Of a stretch of DNA of 64,000 nt, positions 5,575 to 60,480 are shown piece by piece. The position numbers and the translations under genes were made by a program. The DNA lies in NCBI RefSeq assembly GCF_006345805.1, contig NC_042997.1, forward strand, positions 128,402,001-128,466,000, given 5' to 3'. Below the pieces are notes generated by a model, which saw nothing but the letters and a program-made list of their open reading frames with translations, was not told the origin of the DNA and did not search any database. Each line of letters begins with the position of its first letter. Position 1 is the stretch's first letter. This DNA is from Octopus sinensis (taxonomy: Eukaryota).

Positions 5575-5725
5575 GCATGACTGTGTGGTTAAAGAGCTTA
5601 CTTCCCAACAATGAAGTTTTAGGTTCTGTCCCCGTGTGGCACTTTGGGCAAGTGTTTTTACTATGGTCCCAGGCGAACCAAAGCTCTGTGAGTGGATTTG
5701 ATAGATAAAAATTGAAAGAAGCCCA
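5575..5725 (+). mobile_element. tRNA-headed SINE 5' half
   Basis: ggcatgactgtgtggttaaagagcttacttcccaac...ctttgggcaagtgtttttactat...gtgagtggatttgatagataaaaattgaaagaagccc. Confidence 0.8.
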
Positions 5726-6248: not shown

Positions 6249-6711
6249 CCTTTCTTTTGGTAAATTCTTTTACAAAAATAAATCTGGAAGCAACAGGTAG
6301 AAAAGCACCTGATGACAAAGAACACTGAACATCTATGAAGCATCTTTAAGTTAAATAATATTCATTTGGTGTGTCTTCTGAAACATATGCAGTACAGAAC
6401 TACCTACTCCATTCCCTTCAACCACAGATTCATTATTGCATTATTAGTATCTTTTGCCATTATATACTGGAGTTGTCTAGTGATAGTCATCTTATTTAAA
6501 TTTCTAATTTGATATGGGACATGAATATATATTGATTGATAGGCTTTATTGATTGATTATCATCTACTTTGTGTCATCAATACAAGCCTTGTCTGTATTT
6601 GAAGCTAACCAATTGTTTATACTTCAACCATTTTGGATCTCCCTAATTTATGTATGTATAAATGTGTGCAGGTGTGTGTGTGTGTGTATGTTTTTGACCT
6701 TCTCTATGATC

Positions 6712-6826
6712 AGGTGTGGCTGTGTGGTAAGAATCTTGCTTCCCAATCACATGGTTCCAGGTTTAGTGCCTCTGCATGGCCCTTTGGGCAAGTGTCTTCT
6801 ACTATAACCTTGGGCTGACTAATACC
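6712..6826 (+). mobile_element. tRNA-headed SINE head, truncated and joined to a LINE fragment
   Basis: gtgtggctgtgtggtaagaatcttgcttcccaatcacatggttccaggtttagtgcc...gggcaagtgtcttctactataacc, with decayed A/B boxes. Confidence 0.8.
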
Positions 6827-8070
6827 TAATGAGTAGAGACTCCATAAGATGTACCTTGTGTAAGCTATGGACACATAAGAGGTGTAGCAATATCAAAGAA
6901 AGGCTAAATAGGAAAGTAGTTTTTGTGTGTGGCAAATGCTCAGGGGGCAATAAACACAGAAAATGTGCAGAAAACAGCTTCCATCACATGCCAAGGGGAA
7001 AAAAACTAGAAGTAGTTGATAGCTTCCATTACTTGGGTGTCCAAGTCAGTAAGAGGGGGTGGATGCTCTGAGAGTGTAGCTCTAGAATAAGAATAGCCAG
7101 AACAAAGTTCAGAGAACTCCTACCTCTGTTGATGACAAAGGGCTTCTCGCTCAGAGTAAAAGGTAGACTGTATGATGCATGTGTATGAACAGCCATGCTA
7201 CATGGCTGTGAAATATGGGCTGTGACTGTTGAGGACATGTGTAATCTTGCAAGGAATGAAGCTAGTATGCTCCGCTAGATGTGTAACGTCAGTGTGCATA
7301 CACGACAGAGTGTAAGCGCCCTGGGAGAAAAGTTGGACATAAGAAGCATCAGATGTGGTGTGCAAGAGAGACGACTGTGCTGGTATGATCATATGTTGCA
7401 TATGGATGAGGACAGCTGTGTAAAAAAGTGTCACACCCTAGCAGTAGAGGGAACTTGTGGAAGAGGTAGACCTAGGAAGAGCTGGGATGAGGTGTTGAAG
7501 CACAACATTTGAACGTTGGGCCTCACCAAGGTGATGACAAGTGACCGAGACCTTTGGAGATATGCTGTGCTTGAGAAGACCTGGCAAGCCAAGTGAGACC
7601 ATAACCATGGCCAATGCCAGTGCAGCATAACCAGCCCATTTAAGAGCACCCTTCAATCATTGGGCAATAAACTGCGCTTGCAAAGACCTGTTGAGTCAAG
7701 TGAAGTCATTGTCATGGCAGATGCCAGTACTGCCTGAGTGGCACCCATGCCGGTGTCACATAAAAATAACCATTCAAACGTGGTCATTGTTAGTGCTACC
7801 TGATTGGCTCTCATGCTGGTGGCACGTAAAAACCACCATTCAAGCGTGGTCAATGCCAGTACTGCATAACTGGCCCTCATGCTGGTGGCATGTTAAAAGC
7901 ACCCACTACACCCTCAGAGTGGCTGGCTTTAAGAAAGGCATCCAGCTGTAGAAACTTTGCCAGATCAGATTGGAGCCTGGTGTAGCCTTCTGGCTTGCCA
8001 GCCCTCAGTCAAACCATCCAACCCATGCCAGCATGGAAAGTGGACGTTAAACGACAACGACAATGATGAT
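6827..8070 (+). mobile_element. 5'-truncated RTE-clade LINE (RT C-terminus, 3' UTR with 66-bp tandem units, (GAT)n tail)
   Basis: SIRCTLCKLWTHKRCS...CGKCSG; KKLEVVDSFHYLG; KFRELLPLL..KG.SLRVKGRLYDAC; MCNVSV...RRLCWYDHMLHMDED...GRGRPRKSWDEV. Stop at 7594-7596; frameshifts present. Confidence 0.92.
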
Positions 8071-8073
8071 GAG

Positions 8074-13904: not shown

Positions 13905-13934
<30 letters not shown>

Positions 13935-14150
13935 GTTTAGCATCCGTTTTCCATGCTAGCATGGGTTGGACGGTTCAACTGGGGTCTGTGAAGCCGGAAG
14001 GCTTCATCGGGCCCAGTCAGATCTGGCAGTGTTTCTACGGCTGGATGCCCTTCCTATCGCCAACCACTCCGTGAGTGTAGTGGGTGCTTTTTACATGCCA
14101 CCCGCACAGGTGCCAGACAGAGCTGGCAAACGGCCACGAACGGATGGTGC
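13905..14150 (-). mobile_element. Young RTE/SINE tail copy with (CAT)n end
   Basis: (cat)n cgtttagcatccgttttccatgctagcatgggttggacgg...ggctggatgcccttcctatcgccaaccactccg; CpGs retained. Confidence 0.9.
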
Positions 14151-14479
14151 TTTTATAATTTATCAATATATACAAATGTTCAAATCTCAATAATATTTCT
14201 AGCAAATATAAATCTTTATATGTATATGTTTTCAAGCTATTTCAAATGAATGCTTATATATTATCATTCTTGTTTTATTTTAAAATTTTGCCTTGATCAA
14301 TATCTTTAAATTGTCAGATACTAACTATAATACTAGAATAACATTGCCACATAAAATACTTGCTATGACTTTTAATTTCATGTTAGCTACCTTTCTTTCA
14401 GAGGTAACTTTTCAGGAAATAAACATAGTTATTGTAGTTTATATTACTCATTTATAAATTTGAGGAGCTTTACATATAC

Positions 14480-25084: not shown

Positions 25085-25220
25085 AGGAATAAGAAGCTTG
25101 CTTCCCAACTGGTTGGTATTAAGTTCAGTCTCACTGCATGACACTATAGTTCTAGGCTGATCAAAAATGTTGTGTAGATATGGTAATAAACCCAGCCAAT
25201 TGTGTGTGTGTGTGTGTGTA
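25085..25220 (+). mobile_element. SINE head whose 3' half appears at 27111-27372
   Basis: taagaagcttgcttcccaac...aagttcagtctcactgcatgacac followed by (GT)n; body and tail resume after the mariner. Confidence 0.6.
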
Positions 25221-25850
25221 TCATCATCATTTAATAATGTCCATTGTCTATGCTAGCATGGGTTGGATGGTTTGACCAAGGCTGGAAGGCTACACCAGAC
25301 TCCAGTCTGATTTGGCATGATCTTCTATGGCTGGATGCCCTTCCAAACATCAACCACTCCAAGAGTGTAATGGGTGCTTTTATGTGCCACTGGCATGGGT
25401 GCCATTTGCATAACACTGGTATCTGAATGACTGATTTTGTTTGGCTTGATGGGTCTTCTTCACAAGCATGACATAATGCCAAAGGCCTCAGTCATTGCTT
25501 CTGTGAGGCCCAACACTCAGAAGGAACTCGGCCACTTTGTCTCCGTGAGGTCCAACACTCAGAAGGAACTCAGTCACTTTGTCTCTTTGAAGCCCAGTGC
25601 TCAAAAGGATCTCAGACACTTTGCCTCCAGAAGGCCAATGCTCAAAAGGAACTCAGCCACTTTGCCTCCGGGGGGCCCCAACACTTGAAAGGAACTCCAC
25701 CACTTCGTCCCATGTCTTCCTGGGTCTACCTCTACCCCAAGTTCCCTCCACAGTTAGAGATCAGCTCTTCTATACACAACTGTCCTCATCCATGTGCATC
25801 ACATTACCATACCAGCATAGTCGTCTCTCTTGCACACCACATCTGATAAC
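25221..25850 (-). mobile_element. RTE-clade LINE 3' fragment containing a 42-bp tandem array (25503-25705)
   Basis: Reverse complement of the same family as 6827-8070 (cagatgtggtgtgcaagagagacgactatgctggtatggtaatgtgatgcacatggatgaggacag...ggtagacccaggaagacatgggacgaagtggtg). Confidence 0.85.
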
Positions 25851-25881: not shown

Positions 25882-27110
25882 TTAGGGTGTTTGGAAAGTA
25901 ATTGCGTTTTTTCATCACTATGAAATATAAATCAACTAATCACATTAGATCCAAGGTTGAATGGGCAGGGACAGTCTAGAAATAACATATCATCTCTCCT
26001 ATCCAACAGTTTGTCATTCATAGTTGCTTTGGTAATTAACCCCATGGAGAATAAGAACTTTATGAAACAACATATTCGCCATTGCTTACTGCATGAACTT
26101 TGAAAGAAAAGTACCACTACAGAAGCGATGAAAAACATTGTTTTATAAACATGGATGCAGTGAAAGCTTCTACATGTCAGCTGTGGTTTAAAAGGTTCAA
26201 AGAAGGCAGTTGTAATGTATCCAACAATCCTTACTCTAGAAGATGACCCACTCTGAGTGATGACTTTTTGAATGAGACTATTGTGTTGGATCCATATCAA
26301 AGTACTAGAGATTTGGCACAAAAATTTAATGTCGTGTTCAATTATCCCACAAACATCTCAAGCAAATTGGAAAAATATGCAAAGAGAGAATTTGGATTCC
26401 ACATGAGCTTACGCTTGAGAACCAAACACAATGTTTCACCATCTGCAGCAGTCTCCTAACCTGTCATTTTTGGAGCGCATTGTTACTGATGATGAAAAAT
26501 GGGTTTTGCATCACAACAAAAAAGACAATGGTTATCATGTAATGAGAGGCTAGTGCTAAAATAAAAAGCAGAACTCCATCCTCAAAACCCCTTGCTTTGT
26601 GTTTTGTGGAACAGCAAAGATATCATCCATTATGAGCTATTGGAACATGGAAGGACCATCAATGCAGAAGTCTAATGCCTACAACTTTATCGCGTCAATG
26701 AAAAATTACGTCGAAAGTGGCCAGCTTTGGTAAACAGAAAAGGTGTTATTCTTTAGTATGACAATTCATGGCCACACTCTTCAAAACAAACCTAAGAAAA
26801 AATAAGACCATTAGGATGGTAAGTTTTTCCATATCCTCCATACTCACCTGACTTAGCACCTATGGATTTCTATCTGTTCCAATCACTAGAATATTTCAAA
26901 AGAAGCAAAACATTCAGAAACAGAGAGGAAGTTGAAAACAGTCTTTCAGACATTTTTCAAGAAAGGAAATAGGTTTCTTTGAATGTGGCATAAAAACGTT
27001 GGGCTGCAGTCATTGAAAACAGTTTTGATTAAAGCAATTCAGATAACCAAAGTTTATATTCGTTTTTATATCCTTTCTAGTAAAATTCAATTACTTTCTG
27101 AATACCCTGG
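25882..27110 (+). mobile_element. Near full-length decayed mariner (D,D34D) transposon
   Basis: TIRs ttagggtgtttggaaagtaattgcgtttt / aaaattcaattactttctgaataccctgg, next to (TA)n. ATG at 26044: MENKNFMKQHIRHCLL, WFKRFKEG, WIPHEL, FLERIVTDDEKWV, YDNSWPH, PYPPYSPDLAPMDFYLF; several stops and frameshifts. Confidence 0.95.
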
Positions 27111-27974: not shown

Positions 27975-28366
27975 AATACTAGAACATATACTAAACTTAG
28001 AATTTTTCTTGGGGTTGCTTAAAATCTTTCCTTTAACCACATCATAGCACCACATTTTGAACAATTTTCATCCATGTTCACATTTTTCCATCCATCATTT
28101 CTGTTCTTACGACTATGAATTTATCATCTGTCTTATGTTTTGAATCAGCTTCCCCTATCTGTTCTGGTTCTTTTTTTAAAGCAGCCAATGCAGTCCTTTC
28201 TTCTTGTTTGAAGTGTTCTTGCATTAGTGAATCCTATTTCGGTTTATAGCCTACGTATTGCTTGTTCAGATGTTTCAAGTTCTTCCCTTGCATTAGATTT
28301 TCTTCTGTCATTTACTTGTCTTTGTGGTTTTTGATCTGGACTTTCATGTGCCCTTCTATTAGCCAT
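27975..28366 (-). mobile_element. Helitron Rep/Hel N-terminal remnant
   Basis: Minus strand MANRRAHESPDQK...ELETSEQAIRRL, then MDENCSKCGAMMWLKE...KFSICSSIRKV (M..C..C.A..W..E...F..CC..GKV pattern). Confidence 0.6.
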
Positions 28367-30089
28367 TTTTTTTTGTCTGTTATTTTCTTAGGTTTGTAAT
28401 CTTAGTAGTTTGTAAGCTACAACAGATATGGTCCCTGTTGTGATGATATCTCTTTTCACTGGATGACATTGTTGTATTCTTGTTACTTTCTTTTTTTTCC
28501 CCCCATTCTCCTTCTCCTCTCTTTTTTCTCTTTCTCTCCCTTGCTTCTCTCTCTCTTTTTCTCTCACCCTCCCTCTCTATTACTCTTGGGTTCTTGATAT
28601 TGAAATGTCTTTTAAACTACCTAAATTGATTACAGTGTTAAACAGTGAAATTTAGTAAAGTAAGTCTAAAACGAAACTCAAAAAATTTGCCACACACAGA
28701 GAAAGATTAAATTGTTTTAATTATACTCACACTCACAGGCACACAAGCAAGCAGACACATGCTTGCACACACATGTACACACACTTTGATGGAATAATAT
28801 GTATACACACACTAACATACACACACATCAATGAAAATACAGGTACATAGACATTGACAAAAAAAAATCACACATACTTATAAATGAACTGTCACAAACA
28901 GATGATGAACACATGTAAACCAACACATTTGTACACATTGTCAGAGAGTTACAACATGCACATGCACACAGGTGTATGCAGATAAGCACACCGCCAAAAA
29001 CTTAAAATACACACATTTATAAACAGAACCAGATAAATACAGCCACAAACCTATATACACATTCACACAATCACATCTGCCTGATTAAAATTCTATTTCT
29101 AAAGTCAAACCTTCTTTTCCTTTCCTCTCCTGCTCATTTTCATATCTTCTTATTTTCCTTCCTCGTTTGCACTCTCCACTGGTAAATACTGTTATTACCA
29201 CTCAATCCAACACACCCACCTTTTCTTTTATCATTAACTTCTCACCACTTACCCTGCCTCCTAACGTTTTCATTATATTAACACCTACATTAACAGCATA
29301 TTTATCTGAATATGTGCGTAATGAAAGATTTAACTGAGAGGTTAATAGATATATAAAGATAGATGTTTAATTGTTCATTACAAAGTTACATCATATGCAT
29401 TGGCTTAACTAATATTTAGTTAGTTTTCAATTTATTCAACTTTATATGTCTGTTAAGATACAAAGATCTGTGGAACATGAAAAGAAAAGAAAAATCCCTT
29501 TACAAGTATGTCCGCATGCTCACACACATTTCCACACATATATGCATATATACATGTATTTACATATATTCAGGTATCAAAGAGATATTTTTTCTGTTAT
29601 CTCCATTCACAAATATGTGGAACTCGGAGTAGCAGCAGAGTGAATCATCAGCTTTGAATAAAGAAATATATTCTATTATATGTTTTGAGTACTCAGTTTC
29701 TTGTTTGTGTCTCAAACTGTACACACACACACACATATAGTTATTCATCTGAAGCTGATGATTTATACTGTAACTAGTCTGTTATAGAGACAGAGCTGAC
29801 ATGAGCTATTGACACATACACTCACTGAAACATATTGTAATTTACTCCCTGATGATTCTCAATTTCAAATATTGATTTTGAGCCAAAACTTTTATTCCTA
29901 ACCAAGTATGTTTTCATTATTTTCTGATACCAAATGAAAGTGGGTGGTAGCAAAAGATGAATATGTTTGTCTCCTAGCTTGAACCTTGTTATTTTGAATA
30001 TTGCTATCAGGTGTGTATTATGTTCTTGAGCAAGATACTCCACTCTCTCAGACATTCACTAACTCAGTCAATATAGTAAATTTTTATTG

Positions 30090-33649: not shown

Positions 33650-33785
33650 TGTCATCACCGTCATTTAATGTCCATGTTCCATGCTGGTACGGGTTAGACA
33701 GTTTGACAGGATTTGATGTGTCCAAGGACTGCATTGAGTTCCAATGTCTATTTTGGCGTGGTTTCTACAACTGGATGTATGCATG
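33650..33785 (-). mobile_element. RTE/SINE tail copy
   Basis: tcatcaccgtcatttaatgtccatgttccatgctggtacgggttagacagtttgac. Confidence 0.75.
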
Positions 33786-34197: not shown

Positions 34198-35830
34198 TTT
34201 TCCAGGAGGTAGAATTAAGTATTAACAGTTTTTAGTTTAAGTTTATCCTCTTGTTTTAATTAACATTGTTTCACATGGCAGCTACTACCAGTCAAAATAA
34301 TAGGGCATTGGATAATTGACTAATGGTACAACAGTTCAGATCTTTTTACTGTATTCTTTGTATAAAGACACTCCTCTTAGAAATGTCTCAATCCACCCAA
34401 ATCAAAATAGATACCATGCATGATGCAACTCATTGCAATAGGTAACAAAATAGCTCTTTAATTTATAATTATTCCTTTAACTTGTACTACTAAATTGAAA
34501 TACTTCTATGATTATAGAATTTGACTCTCTTCGAGAGAACAGGCTGCACTAGGTTGACATTCCTTAAATACTCAGTGTAAAGAAAATGTCTGCATGTACT
34601 GCGCCTATGATCAAATGGACAATGTTTTATTTTTTTATATTGTATTTACATGGAAGAGGCTTATTTTTTACCTGAGTCTTCTGAGACATGGATTAGATTA
34701 ATGTTTCTCTTGAATAAGTTGCAAGTTAATGACCGGAGGAAAAAAACATAGGCAGGGTGGAATTCAAGAGAGTAACATTGACGAGGAAAGATTGAGTAGA
34801 GTGGTTAATACACATCTAGGACATTTTAGGTTAAGTGACACTCTGTCCAAGATACTGTGGGAGCAATACTCCATTTTGAGTCTCACCTGATTGCAGGTTA
34901 ATGTTAATAGTTCCTGGAAAAGGATAAGAAAATGGGTATCCAACATAAATGTATTTGTTCTTGGAATAATTAGCTGTTACATATTTGCTTCTTTAACTTG
35001 CTATCTATTTTATTTCATGGCTCATAATAATATTGGTTTGTTACATAGACACAAGTCCTGGAATTTGAATGGGGAAAGTACAGTTGATTATATCAACCCC
35101 TAGTACTTTATTTTGTCAATTCTAGAAAGATGCAAAGCAGAGTTAACATTGGCAAGATTTGAGCTCAAAATAAGATCTGATACAATTATTGCAATGCTTC
35201 TGTTACTCCTGCTTAACAATTTTACCAGTCAACTGCCCTATCAACTGATAATTTATTTTTTTAATACTAGAAGGATGAAAGGGAAAGTCAACAGTGGTGA
35301 GATTTGAACTCAGAATATGGTTGACTTTATCTTTCGAATAAAATTGATAAATCTTAGCAACCAATCAGCTGCAAGTTAAATTACTACTTTTAGAAATGCT
35401 TTCATTCCAATTTTTTTTATGTAGCTTTTTAGTTTTATATTAAAATCAAATAGTTTTGAATAAAATTTATTTTCTTATGTTGCTATAAAGATCTGATTAT
35501 GTTACTAGTTTTTTTTTCTCTTTTTCTTTCTCCTAGGAGCTTAACTACATCCTATTTATTTTTATGAGTCAAAATAAAAAAGAAACAAGAATATTAAATC
35601 TCTCAAAATAGTATTAGAATCTCAAAGAGATTCTTCTAAACTGATATGTTCATCCACAAAATAAACCTTTCTTTGAACTGTATTCTTTGTGTTTAAATCT
35701 GACTTAATTAAAAGCTTCTAAGGTTATTACATTGATATTAGTTTTCAGATACTAAGTCAAATCTTTCTACAAATATTTTATAATTTTCTGTTTTTGTTTT
35801 TATTTCTTTATTCAAAAATCAAAATTGTAA

Positions 35831-35904
35831 ATACTAATAATTAACTCTTCTTTTATTTTTCAGGTAAGTGATAACCATACTGATTCCATTCCACAAATGT
35901 AAGT
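35831..35904 (+). other. Recursive-splice-site / RS-exon-like element: 3'ss at 35863, GTAAGT at 35864, second GTAAGT at 35899 (35-nt exon)
   Basis: TACTAAT branch-like motif, TTAACTCTTCTTTTATTTTTCAG|GTAAGT, then ...CACAAAT|GTAAGT. Only frame 0 is open (VSDNHTDSIPQ). Confidence 0.6.
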
Positions 35905-36949
35905 CGAAAACATCTCAATTTTCAACTTTGTTATAAATTATATATTATTTTTACATATTCTGTTTTACTTGTACTACAGTGTTTTTTTTTGTTTTTTTTA
36001 TCAGTCTTCACTCTATTAAACTTGTATTATTCACTCTTGAATAACCACCACTGTTCTGCAGTTGTGATCATACAAGTTGACAAAATACATAGAATTAGTG
36101 AATTAGCATTTGTATCAGTCTAGTTAGTTTCAATCAATCGACATCAAATTCTTTAGAAAGAAATTTACTGATTTTATGTAATAATATTTCCAGTTACCCT
36201 TATCTTATTTCTGACTCCTTTCAATTAAATGTCAACCATCTGCATGATGTCATTGATGTCAAGATGTAGACAAGGTTGACAACTGTCCCCCTCTTCATTA
36301 TCTTTACTATTTTTTCCAACCTTGGTGCACAAATCCTAAGTGCCTTTCATGTATACATAATTTCCCATTTCCTTATGCCAGTAGATTGTGATGAATGAAG
36401 ATTCCCAGTGGTACATATAACATAACTTAATTGTTGTTTAACTAGTGTTGATGTTGAGAAGTAAATTTAGTTGTAAATATATATGTATATATGTGTGTGA
36501 GAGAGCATGTGTGTTTGTGTGTGTGTTTCCACCCACAATTCATAGAAATCTCTAAAACAATACAACAAACTCAATGTTTCCTGAATCTAAATCTCTGAGA
36601 ACCATGTTTTATTACACTATAAGAGCAAATGAACCCTCAGGTGCAAGCATACTCTAATTATAGATGTATTTTAACATTATATAAATACTGACACAAAAAT
36701 ATCTCCAGAAATATTCTATATTGGCATCTCAAATATGTATTTCTTTTTAAAATTATTTTATTATGATATAAGGGCAATACTCATGATTTCTCCATGGGCT
36801 CAACTCCAACACAGATAGCAGGTGAGGGGTAGGAAATTACTCTCAGGCCAGAGTAACAAAGTAGACACTGGGGCTAGATGTTGGTGTTCAGCAGAGCAAC
36901 AGATCAAGTCTACCATTTAAGAACTGGTGCAGTCCATTTAGCAGGCTTT

Positions 36950-37330
36950 TATCCTTTATTTGTTTCAGTTATTAAACTGTAGTCATGCCTTGAAGAGCTT
37001 TTAGTCAAATGACTTGGCTCCAGTACTTATTTTTTTTAACCTGATACCTATTCTCTCAGTCTCTTTAGCCAAACTGCTAAATTACAGAGACAAACACACC
37101 AACTCTGGTTCACTGGTTGTCAAGCAGTAGTGGGCAATAAACATAGGCACAAATACACACACACATGTGATGGGCTTCTTTCAGTTTTCATCTGCTAAAT
37201 CCACTCACAAGGTTTTGATCAGCCCAAGACTTTAGTAGAAGATACTTGCCCAATGTGTCATACAGTGGGATTGAACCTGGAACCGCGTAATTGAGAAGCA
37301 AGCTTCTTATCACACAATCATGTCTGCACC
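36950..37330 (-). mobile_element. Full-length tRNA-headed SINE (head + CA tract + core + tail)
   Basis: tgtttcagttattaaactgtagtcatgcc...aaactgctaaattacagagacaaacacacc...gggcttctttcagttt...caagcttcttatcacacaatcatgtc. Confidence 0.85.
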
Positions 37331-39159
37331 TATGGTTTCTATATAGTTTCTCTATGGAATATTCAGTTTCATTCTCAAGGTTTGAATCAAATTAAGACTA
37401 ATAGTAGAAGATACTTTCTCTGACTGTAATGCAGTGGTATGAACCTAGAATCTCATGATTTGTAAAGGAAACTCTTTTAAGCACAATCGTCTCTCTAACC
37501 ATAAATTTATATACTTCTGTATAACTATACATTGTGTTTGCATATGTGTGTGTGTGTGTGCATGCATGTGTGTGTGTATGTGTGCATGCATGTGTGTGTG
37601 TGTGTGCGTGCATGTGTGTGTGTGGTGTGTGTGTGTGTGTGTAAAATTGTTATATTTAATTTATTTTAATTGTATGGGCTGCCATTAATTCATCTTAGGA
37701 AAGGAATTTTTTTTTATATTATTAAATTTCCTTTTCTTTCTAAATCTGAAGAAATTCTTGCTGAGATCAGAGCAGTTGACTCATAAACCTGTGGATCTTA
37801 AACATTCAAGATCATTCACATTTCAAATACTTTCAATATATTATAAATTGTTGAAAGATTAAAATACAAAATGACAAGTAAAAACTCTAAACTGTCTGTA
37901 GCTATTTGCTAAGTACTATTAATAGTTTCAAATTACTTTTATGGAGTTTTATGTATTTTTATTGTTGTCTTATTTTCAATATTTTTTAAGGCTTTCTATC
38001 TCTTTGTTTCCCCCACCTTGCCCTATGAAAGTTCTGTATGATCTTATTGAAGGAACTTAATAGAAATAATACTTCTGGAATGGAGTCAGGGATCTTCAGC
38101 ATGAAAGAAAAAAAATAATAGCTTCTGTAATGCAGATATTTGGCTGACTAATCTAAGTTGACTTGTTTTTATTAAGAGTGTGGAAGCAATTAGTATGATT
38201 TCATTTTTGTCATGAATATCAAGTAGAAACCTACCCTTTTTAAAACTTATTCCCTACCTCCATTTATTAAAAGAGATCAAATAAAAGCATATATTTTTTT
38301 TAATAATTAGCTTTAAAAAAAAAAACATGTGAGAGATATTAAAAATTTAGATTTATTCTATATTTTATTGATATAGTGATTTTCCTTGTGAAGAATTTCT
38401 CTCCTTAAAACAGCACAGTTGAGAAATATAGTTTCACTAGTTTTGTTTGTAATGTTATTTCATTTCTTTAGAAGTTTGGTCATATTTCTTGGACTTGGCA
38501 AAGACTCTTTACTTTTAGTTTCTTAAATCTGCCAAACTAGAGCATCAACACCACTGCCATTTCATGGTTGAAGTGTTGCAAAAGCATTCAGCTGTAAATC
38601 ACAACGTTCAACAATACAAGAAATGGTGAAGTATTAACTGCTCAAGGCTTTGGAATCTTAGATTTCAGATTCATTTAGTTTTAAAAGAATTTTGTGTGTA
38701 GTTTTCAAGTTTGTAGAAAGGTTGCATGTTGCTGAAAGGAAGATAGTTTAGATTTTACATTTGAATCTGGACAACTGTGTAATATGTGACCCATGTAACA
38801 GAAGATTAATTTCAGGTAATGAATTGAAGGTCAAAGAATGTCTGGCAGTGACAATTTACAATTCAGTATCTATTTCTTTCTTTCTTTCTCTTTCTAAATA
38901 AAATCAGAATGACCTACTAGTTATAGTATGATAATCTTTGACTCTGTGGTTGTGAGTTCAAATCTTAGAAAAGTTATTGTGTTAGATATTTTTGTGAAGC
39001 AATTTATTTACTTGCTTCACAAAAATACTTTGTCTACTTGGTTTAAGAATATAGATATTCTGCTTCAATCTTTGGGGTTATGGAGGGCATGTCTTTTAAA
39101 TTTCACTGTCTGAATTTGTATATCTATGCAATTCATGTTGAAATGGAAAGAAAAACACT

Positions 39160-39470: not shown

Positions 39471-40925
39471 ATATGTAATTATTAGATATTGTTACATCAG
39501 ATGTTTTCCCATGCTTCTGAAGATTTGATGATTCTACCAAGTTTGACATTTCTGTTGTTCAGAACAAACGTGTTAACAATAGATGCCCTTTCTGTGCCAA
39601 CTGTGCAACACCTTTAAGTCTGAAATGTCAGCTGTTGGTCATTGTACTATCTGCAGTACAATTCTTAACAGATTGTAATGTCAAAGTAAAAGGCCGTGAA
39701 CAAACTATTAGATAGAATGAATGAAAGTAAGGTCATGGATTCACTGAATTTTGTGATTAAAATTTGATAACAGATTAAATGATGCCTCTTGTATCCAGGT
39801 TTTGTTGTTATATAATGCCAAGTTAGTCCAATTAAGTAAACCAATGGTCAAAAGCATTCCAATAGTGACAATCTTGTCCTTTTATATATATCTACAATTA
39901 CTTCCTCCATTCTGTCCTGGTTTATTATTTTTTTTTAGATGAGTGCAATTTGAGGAGTTTGGAGTAATGTTCCTAGAATGATGGTTGATTTCATTGATGA
40001 TCCCTCATTGGCTTATATCAGAGATTGAAATTTGAAGCAAAAGTGATGAAACTACAACTATGTTTTGAAGAAGCTTCATGTTCATCCTTAAACTTTTGTC
40101 TTCATTTCAAGAAATTGGGTCTTTCATAGGAATATCTCTTCAAAATTATCCAAACTAATTTCTTAACTTGTCTACAGATGTAGCATCAACATCTGTCTTT
40201 ATTCTTATTATATATGATATATCTACAAATGTTTCATTAAGAGATTTTGTTATGACATAACGTGGTATAGACAAGTTTGTAAGACATGCAAATCTATACA
40301 ATTATGCATATGTTATGTTTAAACTCTCAAATTGTCAGGTTATACTGCAATATAGACAGGTAAATACTGATATGCTACAACACTGAAGAACAAAGTAACA
40401 CATTAAATTCAAATAAGGAATACCACTATTCAAAAATGGAAGTGGGCTGTAGTACATCAGCCAATCAGAATTGTAGGTAGCTCAGTTAGACTGACAAAGA
40501 AATCGACAGTAGAAAGTAGGAGAGTACCAGGTTATGAATAAGTAGGAAGGGGACCTAACGTAATCTAATACAACAAAGAACAAAAAAGTTTGAATGGTAT
40601 CTTCTATTTTAAAATGTTGTTAAACCAAACCATTCAACATAGAATCAGACACTAGTATCAAAAATTTGTAACTGGCGCCAACCTTGATCTCAGACTCAGT
40701 CAATATTTTGAAGTATGCTGTAGATGCTATTAGTCAAAGGACAATATATTAAATCATATTGTGTAGTGTGGTTGCATATATGCCATATATAAGTATATAA
40801 GTGCCTTAATTTGCTTTCACAAAGATAACATGTAGAAAATTAAAATGAATACACTAGAGTAAATTGGGAGAGATAGCAAATTAATATATAGAGGAATTAT
40901 TGTGGATTAATATGAAGAATTAAGA

Positions 40926-41229
40926 AAAACTTTGAAAAAATTCAACAGAGAAAGAGACAAAAAAACTGTGCTATATTTATAATTACAATACCAAGAATAT
41001 TGAACACATTAAGAAAAGCAGATTAAGATAAAAAAAAGAAAAAAGAGGGGAAAGGTAATTGAGATAAATATGATGGGTTCAGGCATACTCAGACCTAAAC
41101 ACAGATTAGGCCTAGGTAAGTAGTTTTAAGTATTAATTGGCATCTAATTCTTTAAAATATACATACTAGCTTATATACTAAGAAAATTTAGATTACAATC
41201 TGTCAGACATTTATTTTAAAGTTATGAAC
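40926..41229 (+). repeat. Left arm of 304-bp perfect inverted repeat
   Basis: Checked block by block by eye against 42244-42547, including homopolymer lengths (A6, A7, A8, A6); no mismatch found. Confidence 0.95.
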
Positions 41230-41619
41230 AAAAATTATCATAATTTATAAGTAGAAATAGAAAAAGAATCAGAACCAATAGTTGTACTAAAAAATGTAAA
41301 TTAACTAAGAAGCCTGATCTACCAAATTAAAATAATATTGACATGTTTATTATAAATTATATATTAAGAAAATAAATAAATCATTTAACTAATTAAATAA
41401 ATTAATGTCTAAACTTAGAAGAGTGCTAGGTATGAATTTATATGATTTATATTATTACTAGGGGGAAATCATACAAATATGAAGTAGATATTTAATTTGA
41501 ATCTATTTAATTTATTTTTTTTATTTAATTTTACCAATCTATTTGATATCATTCGAATGATAAATAATTATAAACTAAGATTGTTTAAATTCAAATTTAA
41601 ATCAATGAAATTAGAGCAA

Positions 41620-42060
41620 GTATGTTTGTAATACACCAAGAATCCTGTTATAGGATGCATTTAAAGTGTTGAAAAATAGATTTCAAACAATTCCATGTGA
41701 CAGAGATTGCAACCCATATCTATTGCTGACATAGGACTTTGCATACCTAGCTATGCTCCATGATAAATTAAACTCTGTATTATTTCCTTTCAATTTCCAG
41801 ATTTTTGTGGCAAGAGAAGTTGATTTTGCTTTACTTCTGGTTATGTAATCTTCATTTGTTATCAATCGTCCCCTATGTATCTGAAAGACCATTGATCAAT
41901 TTTTACAGTACACCTATACATGATCTTTATAGTCAAGTATTTATTGTTGCACAGTTTAGTTAAACCTAGGGAGAGGAACAACTTGGAGTACACAATTGAC
42001 TGTATTATTCTGTCTTCTGTTGTTTTGAGTTGCTATAAGTGTTGGTATCTCTATCATTAT
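41620..42060 (-). mobile_element. Penelope-like element GIY-YIG endonuclease remnant
   Basis: Minus strand KIMYRCTVK...FRYIG, KSTSLATKIWKLKGNNTEFNLSWSI..AKSY, and CNLCHMELFEI in the next frame; frameshifted. Confidence 0.8.
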
Positions 42061-42243
42061 TTGTTTTACCATTATTACTATTATAAACATCTCTTAGATC
42101 CTCATCGGTGTTAAATTGATTATGACTGCTATTATAATTCAAATTATTCCTACAATAATTACTCTTTATACTATGATTACTGTCATTATCAACATTACCC
42201 TTCTTCTTCTTCTTCTTTTTCTTCTTCTTTTGCTTCTTTTAAA

Positions 42244-42547
42244 GTTCATAACTTTAAAATAAATGTCTGACAGATTGTAATCTAAATTTTCTTAGTATAT
42301 AAGCTAGTATGTATATTTTAAAGAATTAGATGCCAATTAATACTTAAAACTACTTACCTAGGCCTAATCTGTGTTTAGGTCTGAGTATGCCTGAACCCAT
42401 CATATTTATCTCAATTACCTTTCCCCTCTTTTTTCTTTTTTTTATCTTAATCTGCTTTTCTTAATGTGTTCAATATTCTTGGTATTGTAATTATAAATAT
42501 AGCACAGTTTTTTTGTCTCTTTCTCTGTTGAATTTTTTCAAAGTTTT
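42244..42547 (-). repeat. Right arm of 304-bp perfect inverted repeat, embedded in (CTT)n
   Basis: Flanked by (CTT)n at 42200-42240 and 42548-42566. Confidence 0.95.
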
Positions 42548-42599
42548 CTTCTTCTTCTTCTTCTTCCTCCTCTCATCATCATCATTATTACCAAATTTT

Positions 42600-43160: not shown

Positions 43161-43192
43161 TTTCAGGTCTTGTTCTTGTGCATATAATAGAA

Positions 43193-43242
<50 letters not shown>

Positions 43243-43364
43243 TACAATACTGATACTTACTACTGTGACTGATATTTTTATTTATATTTCCATATTTTGG
43301 GCTAATGTTATGCTTATTACAAGTATCTTTATTACAACTACCATTATAATGATTATTATTATTT

Positions 43365-44050
43365 TCATATACACACAACAGATTAGACTGATGGAAAAGA
43401 AAAAAATCCCAACATAGGCTACAACAAGTAATCTTAGATGCCAGGAACTCTGCTAAGATTGTAGCTGTCTCTAATAACATTGTTTTCTGGAGCTGTACTA
43501 AACTGGGTTTTATGCCTATTTCCTTTATTCCTCTGTTCAGATCTTTAGGGATAGTTCCCAATGCACCCATAACTACTGAGATACATTTTACCCTCACTTT
43601 CCATAGTCTCTGTAATTCAATGACTAGGTCCTGGTACTTTGCAATTTTTTCTATATCTCTCATATTGAATTTTTCATCATTTGAGACTGTAAAGTCAATT
43701 ATCTGGCACTTTCTATTCTTTTTATCTATTACTACCAAATCAGGCCTTCTAGCCTCTAGTACTCTGTCAGTCTGAATGTTAAAGTCCCACAACATCTTGT
43801 ATTTCTTACTTTCTAATACTTTACTGGGTGCATGCTCATACCATTTATTAGTATGTTCAAATCCTAGCTTTCTACTAAATCCCAGTGGAGTACTCTCGCT
43901 AGGTTGTCATATCTTTTCTTGTATTCTTTCTTTTCCTTGTGCGCTACATTCACTTACTATATGAATAATGCTTTCCTCTTTTGATTTGCATAACCTACAT
44001 TGGGAATCTAGTTCAGACTTTTTTACTATTAAATTCATTACACTTCTTGA
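43365..44050 (-). mobile_element. 5'-truncated R4/Dong-clade (RLE) LINE ending at a (TAA)n array (43195-43365)
   Basis: CRLCKSKEESIIHIV...YKKRYDNLARVLHWDL; WYEHAPSKVLE; MLWDFNIQTDRVLEARRPDLVVIDKK...IIDF...KIAKYQDL...VVMGALG...LQKTMLLETATIL. Confidence 0.9.
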
Positions 44051-48273: not shown

Positions 48274-50147
48274 AGGAAGTAAAAAGAACAAATCCGTTGC
48301 AACAAGCAAACAGTAAAATACAATAAAACACCTAAAGAAAACAAGCCAAAAGCAGATATGAATCCTGTCTTAATATTTTATTTCTGAAAAAGAAATATTT
48401 TGTCCATGCAGTGTTTTGATTGAAAGCCATTACAAAGTAGACTAATTACTCTTTTACCAATTCCATCAGCATATTAAATTGAGCTAATGTAAAATAAAAC
48501 ATGTCTCATCATTAGAGGTTAGGAATATGGTGGGGTTAATGATATGTATCTTTGTCTGATTTCAAATCAACCATTGTAAAATGGAGAGAGAGAGAGAAAT
48601 GACCAAGTAAATCAGGACTGGGAGAAAATGGAAAATATTTTTTTTTGCTCTTTTGTTTTGTTGTATTTTTTTTCTGTGTTTGTTAGTTTTTGAATAAAAC
48701 CTCATCCATGACTTCTTTTGTTTATGCTTGAATTGTCTGATCAGAAATTGAAGACCTTTGTTATGTTCAGCTGAATTGTCAGGTAATCCTGCTCCATTTG
48801 GCACACTCTGACAGGTTTCCTCTCTCTCTATCTAACTCCCTAGCTCTCTGTGTCATATGTCTTTCTTCTCTCTCTCTCTCTCTCTAACTCACAATATCAT
48901 GTCTTCTTTCTCTAACCCTCTAACTCCTTAGCTTTCTTGTCCTTCTTGTCTCCTTCCCTTCCTCCCTATCTTTTTCTTTCTCTCTCTCTCTAGACCTGTA
49001 GCTCTCGCTTATTTGTCCTTATAACTCTCTCTCTCTCTCTCTCTCTCTCTCAATCTGTAGCTCTCTTTCTAACTCACTCTCTGTCTCCTCTATTTTTCTC
49101 TACTCCCACTTTCTCCCCCTCTCCTCTTCTCTATCCTCTGTTCTCCCCCTTCTCTCCCTCACTCACTCTCTGATATGGTGCTCTTTATCATATTATATGC
49201 AATGCCCATAACTTTCAGGGTATTAGTCACATTCAAATTCAGTTTCCTCTGTCTCCCAACCTCATTTTCTCTCTCTTTTGTCATTCTCTTTATTCTCTCT
49301 CTCTATTTTGGTCCTTTCTCTGTGTTCTCTCACCAATTCACTTTCAAAACTTTTATTTTTCTTATCTGATTCCTGTCTAATTTTCTCCTATCTGCCCTCT
49401 CTAAATGCCTTAATCATCCTCACTATTTACTAAAACAAACTCCTTTAATTTTACATAACCTTCATTCGTTAATCCTTCTAGTTATCATTTCCCTTCTCCC
49501 ACTAGCCTATCACTCCAGTCACAATTTTTGTGATAATATTTTATAATGTACATGGATATTGAGAATATCAAACATTCAGTTTCAGATAAAAAAGTGTAAT
49601 AGCCCCACTGCCAAGACTTAAACAATGTATCTATGGTTTGTCAAGTAATAATATTATTTATTATACTGCAGTCCATCTTAATTTTGGTGTTGTGGAGGAT
49701 ATTGTTCTGCTACTTTAACCCCACTGTCTTCTTTCCCCATTATAATTTATCGCCCTTTTAGGGCTAGCAGGATACATTAATTGCCAAATAGATATGTAGT
49801 TTGAATACTATTACTAAGGATTATTGCTCTTTTCTACTGAAAATTACACTGCTTTTCTATCTTGTATATTTTATGTCACATTTGATGAACAATAGCATTG
49901 TTCATTAAACAGATTTTGGTGGGCTGATCAGTGGGTCACAATGTTTACAATAACAAGTGTGACAAGGAAATGCCTGTGCATCCCAGGTGGAGAAATATCA
50001 CAGGATATTTTTGTTTAAAAGTACAAGTTTTTTAGGCAACTGTTGTTTGCATCTTTAGCTGATATACTTTAGTACAAGATATACTCATACATGTATGTAC
50101 ATATATATGTGTATATATCTATATGTATCTCTCTATATATATATATA

Positions 50148-50330
50148 ATCATCATCATCATTTAACATGCACTATCCATTCTGGCATAAGTGGGATAGTT
50201 TAACAAGAGTTGGCCAGGCACTAGCCTCAGTTGAGGTCAGTTTTGGCAAGGTTTTTACAGCTGGATGCCCTTCCAAATGCCAACCACTTTACAGTGTGGA
50301 CTGGGTGCTTGTAAGTGGTATCTGCACTGA
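50148..50330 (-). mobile_element. RTE/SINE tail copy
   Basis: atcatcatcatcatttaacatgcac...ctggatgcccttccaaatgccaaccactttacagtgtggactgggtgc. Confidence 0.8.
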
Positions 50331-54099: not shown

Positions 54100-54785
54100 C
54101 TTTTATCTTTTACTAGTTTCAGTCATTAGACTGCAGCCATGATAGGGCACTGCCTTGAAAAATTTTAAGTCAAATGAGTTGACCCCAGTACATCATCATC
54201 ATCATCATTTAACGTCCGCTTTCCATGCTAGCATGGGTTGGACGGTTCAACTGGGGTCTGGGGAGCCCAAAGGCTGCACCAAGCCAGTCAGATCTGGCAG
54301 TGTTTCTACAGCTGGATGCCCTTCCTAACGCCAACCACTCCGAGAGTGTAGTGGGTGATTTTATGTGCCACCGACACAGGTGCCAGACGAGGCTGGCGAA
54401 CGGCCATGCTCGGATGGTGTTTTTTATGTGCCACCGACACAGGTGCCAGATGTGCTGGCGAACGGCCACGATCGGATGGTGTTTGTTACGTGCCTGGTGC
54501 TTATTTCATCAATCACTCTTGCTGAATCACTAAGTTAGAGGATGCAAGAATACCAACATGGTTTGTCAAGTGGTGGTGAGGGACAAAAATAGACACGAAG
54601 ATGTACACACATAGGCACATGTATGACAGGCCACTTTCAGCTTTCATCTACCAAATCCACTCACAAGGCTTTGATCAGCCCAAGGCTATAGTAGAAGACA
54701 CTTGCCCTAGGTGCCACACTGTGGGACTGAACCTGGAACCATGTGATTGGGAAGCAAGCTTCTTACCACACAGCCATGCCAGCAC

Positions 54786-54790
<5 letters not shown>
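54100..54790 (-). mobile_element. tRNA-headed SINE interrupted by a young RTE-tail copy (54190-54500) with a 62-63-bp tandem duplication
   Basis: Tail 54100-54190, inserted (cat)n...ggatgcccttcctaacgccaaccactccgagag..., core 54500-54600, head 54620-54785. Confidence 0.85.
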
Positions 54791-54841
<51 letters not shown>

Positions 54842-55342
54842 GCATACATGCATACTTTATTTATCATGTATTGTAGCCTACAGTGTCTCAGATAGAGAGA
54901 TGTGCCTGTTAGATATATGTTCAGTGTTATAAAGCCAAGGAAAGTAGAATGGCAGGATTATGAGAGTGTTGTTCTGTTGCTTTTTTCTTATTTTTTCATT
55001 TTGGGGGTGTTGGGTGGGAAGACGTCTCTCATGGTATCACAATATTAATTAGATTTGAATTTTCTGAAAGTGCTCAGTGGGTTGCGAGCAGTTACATGCA
55101 TTTAGATTTACAAATTGAGGGGAAAAAATACAATCAACACATCTATCAAAGTTTTATTTATTTGTTTGAAAATGCTGATTCACTTTGTTGTTACTCTGAG
55201 ATTCTTATCACATATGATCCTTAATTTGTTTTGTCACCTGAAGAATTGTACATAGCAAGACACACTGAGTGGTGATGTAGCAAGTAAATGCCTTTAAGTA
55301 AATGCATGTATGATGATGGTACACACACACGTACACATATAC

Positions 55343-57694: not shown

Positions 57695-58369
57695 TGCATA
57701 AATATACCTACATATACATCATACATACTAAAGCATTCATAACCTTGCACACATATGCGTATATCCATAAACATACATATACACATATAAACAGGCACAG
57801 TAGTCTGATGTTTATGTTTTCCATTAAGTTCAACTAGCATCATTAGTGTCATTATTCAACTCGCTTTCTTTCTCTCTCTCTCTTTCTTTCTCTCCCTCTC
57901 CTTTCCTCTGCATATGTGCCTGTATGTGTGCATACACCAGTCATGAAACATCAGAAAATATATCACCATACACCATCTTCCAGAAGAATAAACCAACCCT
58001 TTAGAATTCTATCTTAACCCTTAAGTATAATTTTACACTAAAAATTTCCCCAGTTAAAATCTATTAGTTATTTTTCTCTCTTTAATTGCTGTATCATATG
58101 TACCATTGATTACCACATGAATAGCATCAAGATGACTTTTACATTAGCTACCAGTCTTGTCTACACAGACTAAAAGGAGAGAGCTTCTATATGATCATTA
58201 GACCATGTAGAGATTTCACTGCTTGGAACAGCTGTTAAATCTTTATCAAACCACTACCATCTTAAAATCAGAATACATAGGTTAATGTAACTTGGGTATA
58301 CTATTCCAGGATTGCTCTGATTAAAGATTAACTTGGAACTGAACATACATTCAAGCATGTCTGTGTAGC

Positions 58370-58740
58370 TAAGAAGTTCATATTGTAACCACATGGTTCC
58401 AGATTTAATCCCTTTGCACAGCGCCTTGGGCAAGTGTCTTCTACCATAACTTAAGCAATACTGTATGGAAAAGTTGATGTAAAATGATGATGATGATGTT
58501 ATGTATCTTACTTGAAAAATAGGTATGGGTAAGTGACAGGAAGAGCATCCATCCATATAATCCTGCCTCAAATAACTTTCTGTCAAAACCCATGCAAGCA
58601 TAGAAATAAAGACATCAAACAGGTCACTTGTCATATTTATTCTGCCTGAGTTGCATAGACACTCCCTGTCACCATTATAAATGAAGTGAAGCAATAATTG
58701 GCCTGTTGCAAACCTATAACCAACGATGTTATTGTTCACA
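58370..58740. mobile_element. SINE head fragment (+, 58370-58460) abutting a SINE tail/body (-, 58490-58740)
   Basis: aaccacatggttccagatttaatccc...ttgggcaagtgtcttctacc; gacaggaagagcatccatccatataatcctgcctcaa. Confidence 0.65.
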
Positions 58741-60480
58741 AAATATAATATAAAATAGATTTAAAACAACAGCCTTATCTGTGTCTTGCACTATGTTGTT
58801 ACTTGAAAAAGCAATTCTCCATATAATTTAAATGTCCATTCTCTGATCAAGGATTTACTACTTTTTCTTTGTAGTTTTATAATTATGTTCTGTTGCTTAA
58901 AACATACACATTGAATTATTCCTTAGAGTTTACCTACATTACTTTGTAAATACATCACAACATTAATATGGCTTCTCAGACTTTTGTCTCAAATCAATGA
59001 AGTTAGATAGCGAGGTTTTATTGTTGTAAGAATTACTTAAAATATAGTCTGGCATGAGGTTGAGTAATTTAGTTGTGGAAAGATGCTATTCTCCAATATA
59101 CATTGATTCAAGTGTGCTGGACTGAAGATTCATGGTATTTTTCTTATTTCTAGTTTAGCCAGATGTGAAAAGTCAATGTCCATGATTTTTGCAGGTCCTC
59201 TGAGATTGGTAGGTGAAAACAAGAAATCACAACTTATAGCTGCATACCAACAAACTTTCTCTCAGTTTCCTTCAACTCAGTTTCATTTACAAGGCTTAGG
59301 CTGACCTAAGATTAGCAAAAGAAGCTTTTGGTTATGGTGCCATGCAATGGGATTGATCTTAGAATTAGTTAATTGTGATCTAAACTTCTTAACTGCACAG
59401 CTATGCTTGCTTCCATTTGCAAAACTATTACATTATTATTATTAATTCATTCTTATTATTGTCTAACTTTATAATAAAATACAAATTGGAGGGAATGACA
59501 CTTGTAATTATCTGATTCAAGTAACACATTTAAATGTTTGAATTTAAAATCTAATCAAATTCATGTCTACTTGTAATAAATAGTTGATAAATGTCTTTAA
59601 TTTAAGGTAACAGCTTAAACTGTAAACAATATTTCTCCTTAAATTCTCTTTAGCACCAAATGTTGGTATTTTATTTAATATGTTAAGTATGACGGAGAAA
59701 GATTATTAAATTAAACTTAACAGAAATCACTTTTAAACCCGTTTGCTCCTGTGTCACCAATTCTATATCTCTCTACACTCAGCTACCAGCTGTAATAAAT
59801 TCTTTTGGTTCCCAACAGCTGTTAGGTTAATGAACCTAATAGCTTTCTTAGTTATTACACTGAATTGTAATTTCCAGGTCAACTCCTATTCTCACTAACC
59901 TCAAATGTTGTTCTTGTATCTCTCCCACCCCACTGCATACCACCCACATTTAACCATAAGATTACAACAGAAGATTTACTGAAGTTGGAATCTTTGTTGT
60001 AAAAGGGGTTATGAAACAAAAGTAGCAACACATATTCTTCAGCTTATCAAAATGATTGTTTTACTTCTTACATATGTAATCTTGTTCACCATATGACATT
60101 AATAATCTTATGCTTACTTAATTATTAAATTATTAAAAGGTCTATTAAATAGCAGCTAATTATATTTGGGAAAATTAATTGTATTTGTGAAAATTAATTT
60201 TATACACTGGTTAGGGTTTGGAGGTCTCCATAATCAACATGTTCAGTAATTTTAAGCGATAAAACATTAAATAATTAAATAATACAAATAATCACTGCTG
60301 AAATATAATATTAACTCCTACTGTGAAAGATTCAAAGAAGAAACATATTTGGGAAGCAGTTAACCAAATATAGTTGACTTTTGTTTGGAGACAATTAAAA
60401 TTTGAAGGCAGATCTAACAGAAGGACTGCAGAATAATTCTGTCTTGCTTAATGCCCCCCCCCCCTTCCCAACCTACTTAC

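What the first reader, a model, noticed from the sequence alone, without database searches (positions are those of the whole stretch)
35831..35904. Recursive splice site / RS-exon architecture deep in apparently intronic DNA
Seen: a branch-like TACTAAT, a ~20-nt pyrimidine tract and CAG followed immediately by GTAAGT, with a second GTAAGT 35 nt later, in repeat-free T-rich flanks. Established: AG|GT 'ratchet points' subdivide long Drosophila introns, and vertebrate RS-exons have this same layout (3'ss + reconstituted 5'ss + downstream alternative 5'ss). Inference: the window lies in a very long + strand intron removed stepwise, with optional inclusion of a 35-nt frame-shifting exon (only frame 0 open, VSDNHTDSIPQ). 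I am not aware of recursive splicing being characterised in cephalopods.
Basis: partly seen in the sequence, partly recalled or inferred. Interest (0 to 1): 0.72.

Follow-up and report, generated by a model that had tools for sequence, protein, structure and literature searches.

The report
Candidate recursive splice site, unverified
The sequence really does look like a textbook "recursive" splice site of the kind that lets flies and vertebrates remove very long introns in steps, but the tools could not show that this DNA is transcribed, lies in an intron or is conserved, so it remains a good candidate rather than a discovery.

Summary
The motif is present almost exactly as described. On the + strand:
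- TACTAAT at 35832-35838
- a 17-nt pyrimidine tract at 35845-35861 (16 of 17 Y, with TT at -5/-6)
- CAG|GTAAGT with the junction at 35863|35864
- a second GTAAGT at 35899-35904, which bounds a 35-nt unit open only in frame 0

The 9-mer alone is at chance level (1 seen, 0.53 expected). With its tract, a site this good is expected about 0.005-0.04 times per 64-kb window. Adding the downstream donor and the branch motif lowers this to about 1e-5 to 1e-3.

Every sequence-level feature of Drosophila ratchet points and vertebrate RS-exons is met. The defining functional features could not be tested: a sense-strand long intron, junction, saw-tooth or lariat reads, and conservation. I found no coding exon in the window, the strand-skew signals conflict, and no orthologue of the site could be retrieved. 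The "cephalopod" origin is also unverified.

Two controls temper the reading. The strongest + strand acceptor lies 327 nt upstream, which allows an ordinary non-coding exon. An equally strong 27-nt exon-like unit lies on the opposite strand 950 nt away.

My estimates: recursive site about 0.38, chance pseudo-site about 0.35, ordinary exon boundary about 0.2.

The parts
35832..35838 (+). Branch-point-like TACTAAT. The presumed branch A is 35837, 26 nt upstream of the acceptor G.
   Evidence: TACTAAY occurs 22 times in the window on both strands, giving P of about 0.005 of falling in a 28-nt branch zone. For CTAAY the figure is 0.056.
35845..35861 (+). Polypyrimidine tract CTCTTCTTTTATTTTTC (16 of 17 Y), with TT at -5/-6 and C at -3.
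   Evidence: The acceptor PWM score is 10.2, rank 5 of 3489 AG sites on the + strand.
35862..35863 (+). Acceptor AG; the putative ratchet junction is 35863|35864.
   Evidence: The AG-free zone extends 107 nt upstream.
35864..35869 (+). GTAAGT directly after the AG: the donor that would be reconstituted after ligation of an upstream exon. In place it reads CAG|GTAAGT.
   Evidence: the only CAGGTAAGT in the window. The donor PWM score is 13.0, rank 2 of 3593 GT sites on the + strand.
35864..35898 (+). Putative cryptic 35-nt RS-exon (GTAAGTGATAACCATACTGATTCCATTCCACAAAT). It is 34% GC, its length is not a multiple of 3, and it has stops in 2 of 3 frames.
35899..35904 (+). Second donor, AAT|GTAAGT. 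It is weaker on the exon side than the first donor and is the only plausible donor within 330 nt downstream.
   Evidence: all other GT sites score 2.0 or less. Its PWM score is 7.4, rank 69.
35515..35536 (+). Strongest acceptor-like site of the whole + strand (tttctctttttctttctcctag|GAG), 327 nt upstream. It belongs to the rival reading, in which 35537-35863 is an ordinary non-coding exon.
   Evidence: score 13.0. The 327 nt are 22% GC and closed in all frames.

Best explanation
This is a candidate intronic recursive splice site (a ratchet point) with a cryptic 35-nt RS-exon, on the + strand.

Proposed mechanism, all of it inferred from sequence and from the published fly and vertebrate model:
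1. The branch site (TACTAAT), the tract and the AG at 35863 are recognised together with the downstream donor at 35899. This defines a 35-nt exon.
2. An upstream exon is ligated to 35864.
3. That ligation recreates a donor, xxG|GTAAGT. It is stronger than AAT|GTAAGT at 35899 and so wins the donor competition.
4. The 35 nt are then removed with the rest of the intron and leave no trace in mRNA.
5. If the second donor were used instead, a 35-nt frame-shifting, stop-containing exon would be included, as a poison exon.

Only the sequence elements are shown. Use of the site is not shown.
For: - All DNA-level features reported for Drosophila ratchet points are present. These are juxtaposed acceptor and donor around AG|GT, a prominent tract and TT at -5/-6 (196 of 197 ratchet points have it; 10.1101/006163).
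- The features of the cryptic RS-exon also fit. It is short, out of frame, and bounded by a donor weaker than the ratchet donor (PMC8605326; measured here).
- The acceptor ranks 5th and the donor 2nd among about 3,500 candidates each on the + strand, and they abut exactly.
- A site this good is expected 0.005-0.04 times per window. The full composite is expected about 1e-5 to 1e-3 times.
- The site lies in sequence that is unique within the window.
- No coding exon is detectable anywhere in the 64 kb, which would fit a very long intron.
Against: - There is no evidence of transcription, strand or intron status. T>A suggests + sense, but C>G suggests the opposite.
- The window could equally be intergenic.
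- The core motif is expected by chance hundreds to more than 1,000 times in a genome of this type.
- An equally strong exon-like unit lies on the opposite strand 950 nt away (34887-34913). The strongest + strand acceptor, 327 nt upstream, offers an ordinary-exon reading.
- At 35 nt the RS-exon is shorter than the roughly 50 nt typical of flies.
- Conservation could not be examined.
- In the held library, no paper reports recursive splicing in cephalopods or octopus.
- By my recollection, few motif matches in vertebrate long introns are validated.
Confidence: 0.38

Rival explanations
1. This is a chance pseudo-site. A perfect donor 9-mer happens to fall at the end of one of the many T-rich tracts of AT-rich, non-coding (possibly intergenic) DNA, with a second GTAAGT and an A/T-rich branch-like heptamer nearby. 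It has no function and is not used.
For: - CAGGTAAGT alone is at chance level, and GTAAGT is not enriched (37 seen against 41 expected).
- The local sequence is 46% T and 78% A+T, which favours both tracts and TACTAAT-like words.
- The window has 19 acceptor-like sites scoring at least 8, and 13 exon-like acceptor-donor pairs across the two strands. One of these is a 27-nt unit on the - strand as strong as this one.
- A looser definition, 'strong acceptor abutting a donor of at least 10 bits', is expected 0.06 times per window even in shuffles.
- There is no sign of a host gene.
Against: The complete composite at the observed strengths is rare under every null I could build: about 1e-5 to 1e-3 per window. 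That means only about one to a few tens of cases per genome. It is the only AG|GTRAG site in the window with a real tract and a downstream donor.
Confidence: 0.35
2. This is an ordinary exon boundary of an unannotated + strand transcript (an lncRNA or a UTR). There are two versions. In one, CAG|GTAAGT is simply the donor of a 327-nt non-coding exon, 35537-35863, that starts at the window's strongest acceptor. In the other, 35864-35898 is a normally included or alternative (poison) 35-nt cassette exon that merely begins with GT.
For: - The acceptor at 35536 scores 13.0, rank 1 on the + strand. It lies 327 nt upstream of the rank-2 donor, which is a typical exon length.
- The 35-nt unit has its own acceptor and donor.
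- Expressed exons that begin with a donor are known in flies and are said to be numerous in mammals (PMC8605326).
Against: - The 327 nt are 22% GC, lower than the window mean of about 32%. They are closed in all frames and end in a full branch site, tract and AG, which is unusual inside an exon.
- The 35-nt unit has stops in two frames and shifts the frame.
- No protein or RNA-family match touches the region.
Confidence: 0.2

Closest known systems
Drosophila intronic ratchet points, i.e. zero-nucleotide recursive splicing (Ubx, kuz, Bx, luna; Burnette 2005, Duff 2015, Joseph 2018, Pai 2018)
   Same: - The consensus (Y)n-TT-NCAG|GTAAGT.
- A branch site about 25 nt upstream.
- A short, out-of-frame, stop-containing cryptic exon ended by a weaker donor.
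- A position far from any detectable exon.

   Different: - Fly sites are defined by junction reads, saw-tooth coverage, lariats and strong conservation, none of which is available here.
- The cryptic exon is 35 nt here against about 50 nt in flies.
- The organism is not an insect. It is reported as a cephalopod, which I could not verify.
Vertebrate RS-exons in very long neuronal introns (Sibley 2015; Blazquez 2018; Boehm 2018, as summarised in PMC8605326)
   Same: The layout of acceptor, reconstituted donor and downstream alternative donor. Inclusion would introduce a premature stop (a poison outcome). The genome appears large, repeat-rich and long-intron-prone.
   Different: Vertebrate RS-exons are usually longer. 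They are validated by iCLIP or RNA-seq, and their regulation depends on the exon junction complex. Nothing comparable could be tested here.
Predicted recursive site in the 230-kb intron 2 of locust NPF1 (PMC8892266)
   Same: That site too was called from the Burnette motif matrix plus an upstream branch site in a giant-genome invertebrate.
   Different: The locust site has supporting U2AF65 RNA immunoprecipitation and a known host intron. This site has neither.
Intronic pseudoexons and poison exons
   Same: A strong acceptor and donor flank a short non-coding segment deep in non-coding DNA.
   Different: Pseudoexons do not need a donor abutting the acceptor. That AG|GTAAGT juxtaposition is the one feature here that is rarer than ordinary pseudoexon architecture.

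Membership tests
Recursive splice site / ratchet point | Juxtaposed strong 3' and 5' splice-site consensus around a central AG|GT | tested here: met
   CAG|GTAAGT at 35861-35869. The acceptor scores 10.2 (rank 5 of 3489) and the donor 13.0 (rank 2 of 3593) on the + strand.
Recursive splice site / ratchet point | Prominent polypyrimidine tract with TT at -5/-6 (196 of 197 fly sites) | tested here: met
   16 of 17 Y over 35845-35861, with T,T at 35858-35859. Criterion taken from 10.1101/006163.
Recursive splice site / ratchet point | Branch point a few tens of nt upstream of the AG | tested here: met
   TACTAAT at 35832-35838, with the branch A 26 nt from the AG and no intervening AG. This is a sequence match only; branch use is not shown.
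Recursive splice site / ratchet point | Downstream cryptic RS-exon: short, frame-breaking, ended by a donor weaker than the ratchet donor | tested here: met
   A 35-nt unit with stops in 2 frames. Its donor AAT|GTAAGT scores 7.4 against 13.0 bits, and it is the only credible donor within 330 nt. Criterion taken from PMC8605326.
Recursive splice site / ratchet point | Located in a long intron, on the sense strand of an expressed gene | tested here: inconclusive
   No coding exon, Pfam host-gene domain, Rfam family or tRNA was found in the 64 kb. Strand skews conflict. The window's own open reading frames (ORFs) are absent from the protein collection. Intron and intergenic DNA cannot be told apart.
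Recursive splice site / ratchet point | Core conserved well above flanking intron across related species | not testable with these tools
   No orthologue of 35.8 kb could be retrieved. A related genome at 87.5-88.8% identity exists in Logan runs SRR11869384, SRR11869385, SRR11869390 and SRR11869394, but I could reach it only at 57.9-60.2 kb.
Recursive splice site / ratchet point | Splicing intermediates: exon-to-site junction reads, saw-tooth intronic coverage, lariats from the site | not testable with these tools
Expressed RS-exon / poison cassette exon | The 35 nt are present in some mature transcripts | not testable with these tools
   There is no transcript resource. Protein searches over the region returned nothing, but an 11-codon segment would not be detectable anyway.

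The most novel reading that the evidence does not exclude
The site is a genuine, selected ratchet point in a giant intron of a cephalopod (or other lophotrochozoan) gene. It would be the first recursive splice site outside insects and vertebrates. It would also imply that stepwise intron removal with cryptic RS-exons is an ancestral bilaterian solution for long introns.
Probability: 0.3. Interest if true: 0.55.

Novelty: new member of a known kind. Interest (0 to 1): 0.3.

Why it matters
Recursive splicing has been documented in flies and vertebrates and predicted in a locust. Cephalopods have large genomes, long introns and elaborate neural RNA processing, yet the held literature contains no report of it for them. 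A validated site would extend the mechanism to a third major animal lineage. It would also give a simple motif rule for finding more such sites. A single motif match without expression or conservation data does not establish this. Its value is as a precisely specified, cheaply testable candidate.

Tried and rejected
1. Orthologous DNA through predicted proteins.
- The 79-aa open frame 35884-36120 gave no hit.
- A concatenation of 22 open frames from 34.9-36.8 kb gave 8000 word candidates, none significant.

2. An exact-pattern scan of metagenome contigs for the site found 0 matches.

3. Host-gene search.
- Stop-to-stop ORFs were filtered by length, entropy, GC and amino-acid composition.
- Pfam on 10 selected ORFs gave only a Mos1-type HTH domain above cutoff.
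- Rfam and tRNA scans were empty.
- Only transposon debris and low-complexity frames emerged.

4. Organism identification.
- The LINE-like ORF hits only proteins of 56% identity or less from unnamed ENA assemblies and a coral.
- Ten window ORFs are not in the collection.
- A search of papers for the SRA run numbers led only to an unrelated paper.

5. The site as part of a repeat or transposon. There is no second copy in the window and no flanking inverted or direct repeats. This reading is rejected within the window and cannot be tested genome-wide.

6. Strand of transcription from base skews. After masking, T>A is 2% and C>G is 3% on the + strand. These signals point in opposite directions, so they are uninformative.

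7. A Markov simulation timed out. I replaced it with an analytic estimate and block shuffles.

8. The - strand reading of the site itself shows no splice-like or coding feature.

Full report
**What is in the sequence**

- TACTAAT lies at 35832-35838. The presumed branch A is 35837, 26 nt from the acceptor.
- The pyrimidine tract CTCTTCTTTTATTTTTC lies at 35845-35861. It is 17 nt with 16 pyrimidines, T,T at -5/-6 and C at -3.
- The AG is at 35862-35863 and is followed at once by GTAAGT at 35864-35869.
- A second GTAAGT lies at 35899-35904.
- The enclosed unit, 35864-35898, is 35 nt and ends in ...CAAAT. The second donor is therefore AAT|GTAAGT.
- Only frame 0 is open (VSDNHTDSIPQ). The other two frames stop inside GTAAGTGA.
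- No AG occurs for 107 nt upstream of the acceptor. No other credible donor occurs within 330 nt downstream.
- The surrounding 2 kb has no second copy in the window apart from microsatellite matches. It is not flanked by inverted or direct repeats.

**Is it more than chance?**

The 9-mer CAGGTAAGT alone is not: 1 is observed against 0.53 expected. GTAAGT is not enriched either, at 37 against 41.

The combination is rarer.
- Of the 13 AG|GTRAG sites on both strands, this is the only one behind a real tract.
- With a simple position-weight-matrix (PWM) score, the acceptor ranks 5th of 3489 AGs on the + strand. The donor ranks 2nd of 3593 GTs.
- Shuffles that preserve composition in 50-200-nt blocks give 0.01 sites per window of the form YAG|GTAAGT behind a tract of at least 80% Y.
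- Those shuffles under-count acceptor-like tracts by 2.3-4.4x relative to the real window: 19 against 8.3, and 9 against 2.0.
- The better figure is therefore 0.02-0.04. That matches an estimate from the real tract positions: 1733-3535 positions at about 1.2e-5 each.
- A stricter PWM definition gives about 0.005-0.01.
- A GTRAGT 25-105 nt downstream adds a factor of about 0.04. A CTAAY motif in the branch zone adds about 0.06, or about 0.27 for the loosest branch consensus.
- In a 2-3 Gb genome the core motif should therefore arise by chance hundreds to about 1,500 times. The complete composite should arise only about once to a few tens of times.

**Controls inside the window that temper the inference**

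- The strongest acceptor-like site of the whole + strand lies 327 nt upstream (last intron base 35536, score 13.0). An ordinary 327-nt exon, 35537-35863, ending at CAG|GTAAGT is therefore a formal alternative. Against it, that segment is 22% GC and closed in all frames.
- On the - strand, 950 nt away, a 27-nt unit (34887-34913) has an acceptor of 10.2 and a donor of 12.0 bits. At most one of the two can be in sense orientation in one gene.
- The window holds 13 exon-like acceptor-donor pairs at moderate thresholds. Shuffles give 3.1, largely because of the excess of tracts.

**Context**

I found no host-gene exon.
- The long open frames are microsatellite translations, SINE-like repeats or transposon debris.
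- The debris includes a Mos1-type HTH domain at 5101-5268 (-) and mariner-like frames at 26.2-26.7 kb (+).
- It also includes the C-terminal part of a non-LTR retrotransposon ORF at 43166-43906 (-). Its homologues are at most 56% identical, in unnamed eukaryotic assemblies and a coral.
- Other debris is RTE-like frames (a non-LTR retrotransposon family) at 6.8-7.5 kb (+) and a 1.64-kb element with 363-nt inverted ends at 40914-42557.
- Rfam and tRNA scans are empty.
- After masking, base skews show T>A by 2% and C>G by 3% on the + strand. These point in opposite directions under the usual transcription-asymmetry pattern.

The window may be a very long intron or intergenic DNA, and I cannot say which. 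The organism could not be named. The window's own ORFs are not in the protein collection.

**Attempts to reach orthologous or transcript evidence**

- Protein-based routes to the orthologue of the site failed.
- A metagenome pattern scan found nothing.
- One route did work elsewhere in the window. The 168-aa open frame at 58257-58760 (-) matched a Logan protein. Its four contigs, from runs SRR11869384, SRR11869385, SRR11869390 and SRR11869394, align collinearly to 57891-60156 at 87.5-88.8% identity.
- So a related genome with about 12% background divergence is public. It would allow the conservation test, but I had no handle on its copy of the 35.8-kb region.

**Comparison with what is known**

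- Drosophila ratchet points are juxtaposed acceptor and donor sites with an unusually strong tract. TT is present at -5/-6 in 196 of 197 sites. They are strongly conserved and divide introns into segments of 2.6-63 kb (10.1101/006163).
- They require a cryptic RS-exon of about 50 nt that is poorly conserved and out of frame. It is skipped because the ratchet donor out-competes its own donor (PMC8605326).
- The same layout underlies vertebrate RS-exons.
- Recursive sites are conserved about twice as well as control AGGT sites (PMC6110457).
- A site has been predicted from the same motif in a 230-kb locust intron (PMC8892266).
- No paper in the library links recursive splicing to cephalopods or octopus.
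- The present site meets all four DNA-level criteria. The three criteria that define the phenomenon (sense-strand long intron, conservation, splicing intermediates) are inconclusive or untestable here.

**Verdict**

Only about one to a few tens of chance composites are expected per genome. Against that stands an unknown number of real sites, which could be tens to hundreds if the clade resembles vertebrates or flies, or few if it does not.

My estimates are:
- about 0.38 for a site used in recursive splicing;
- about 0.35 for a functionless chance site;
- about 0.2 for an ordinary exon boundary of an unannotated transcript.

That is interesting but not surprising to a splicing specialist. The interest score is 0.3.

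Noticed in passing
window 34887-34913 (- strand): A 27-nt, frame-preserving, microexon-like unit: ccattttcttatccttttccag|GAACTATTAACATTAACCTGCAATCAG|gtgagact. Its acceptor scores 10.2 and its donor 12.0 bits. It is as exon-like as the reported unit but lies on the opposite strand 950 nt away.
   Followed up: partly
window 35515-35537 (+ strand): The strongest acceptor-like site of the whole + strand (ttctcctag|GAG, score 13.0), 327 nt upstream of the reported site and in the same T-rich stretch.
   Followed up: partly
window 58257-58760 (- strand); loci L001-L004: A 168-aa open frame, far longer than chance allows in this AT-rich DNA, with no Pfam match. Logan contigs from runs SRR11869384, SRR11869385, SRR11869390 and SRR11869394 align to 57891-60156 at 87.5-88.8% identity. 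This shows that a related genome is public. In that species the frame is broken differently, so the frame is probably not a conserved gene.
   Followed up: partly
window 40914-41274 and 42201-42557: 363-nt inverted repeats at 94.5% identity bracket about 0.9 kb, forming a young element of about 1.64 kb with terminal inverted repeats. Each arm carries an AG|GTAAGTAG site.
   Followed up: partly
window 43166-43906 (- strand): A 247-aa open frame matching the C-terminal region of non-LTR retrotransposon proteins. The best matches are 56% identical, and some hits carry a zf-RVT domain. It runs into an AAT-type microsatellite.
   Followed up: yes
window 4715-5268 (-) and 26247-26730 (+): Two degraded mariner/Mos1-type transposase remnants in opposite orientations. 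The HTH_48 domain at 5101-5268 scores above the Pfam cutoff. The second remnant was recognised by eye only.
   Followed up: partly
window 2669-2873, 3167-3370, 7818-8072, 13915-14154, 25220-25407, 33653-33777, 50087-50317, 54189-54435: At least eight copies, 68-87% identical and in both orientations, of a SINE-like repeat of about 170-250 nt and higher GC. A second family has copies at 4495-4658, 5543-5725, 6650-6837, 37117-37332 and 54563-54849.
   Followed up: partly
window 23401 (- strand): A second strong acceptor directly followed by GT: gtttttctttttttctattacag|GTAATATA. Its donor is weak and no donor follows downstream. It is a weak ratchet-like site on the other strand.
   Followed up: no
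window 28081-28616 (- strand): Charged, protein-like open frames (for example ENNRQKKMANRRAHESPDQKPQRQVNDRRKSNAREELETSEQAIRR) next to a GA/CT-rich low-complexity block. They may be a transposon remnant. The block explains the strong GC skew at 28-30 kb.
   Followed up: no
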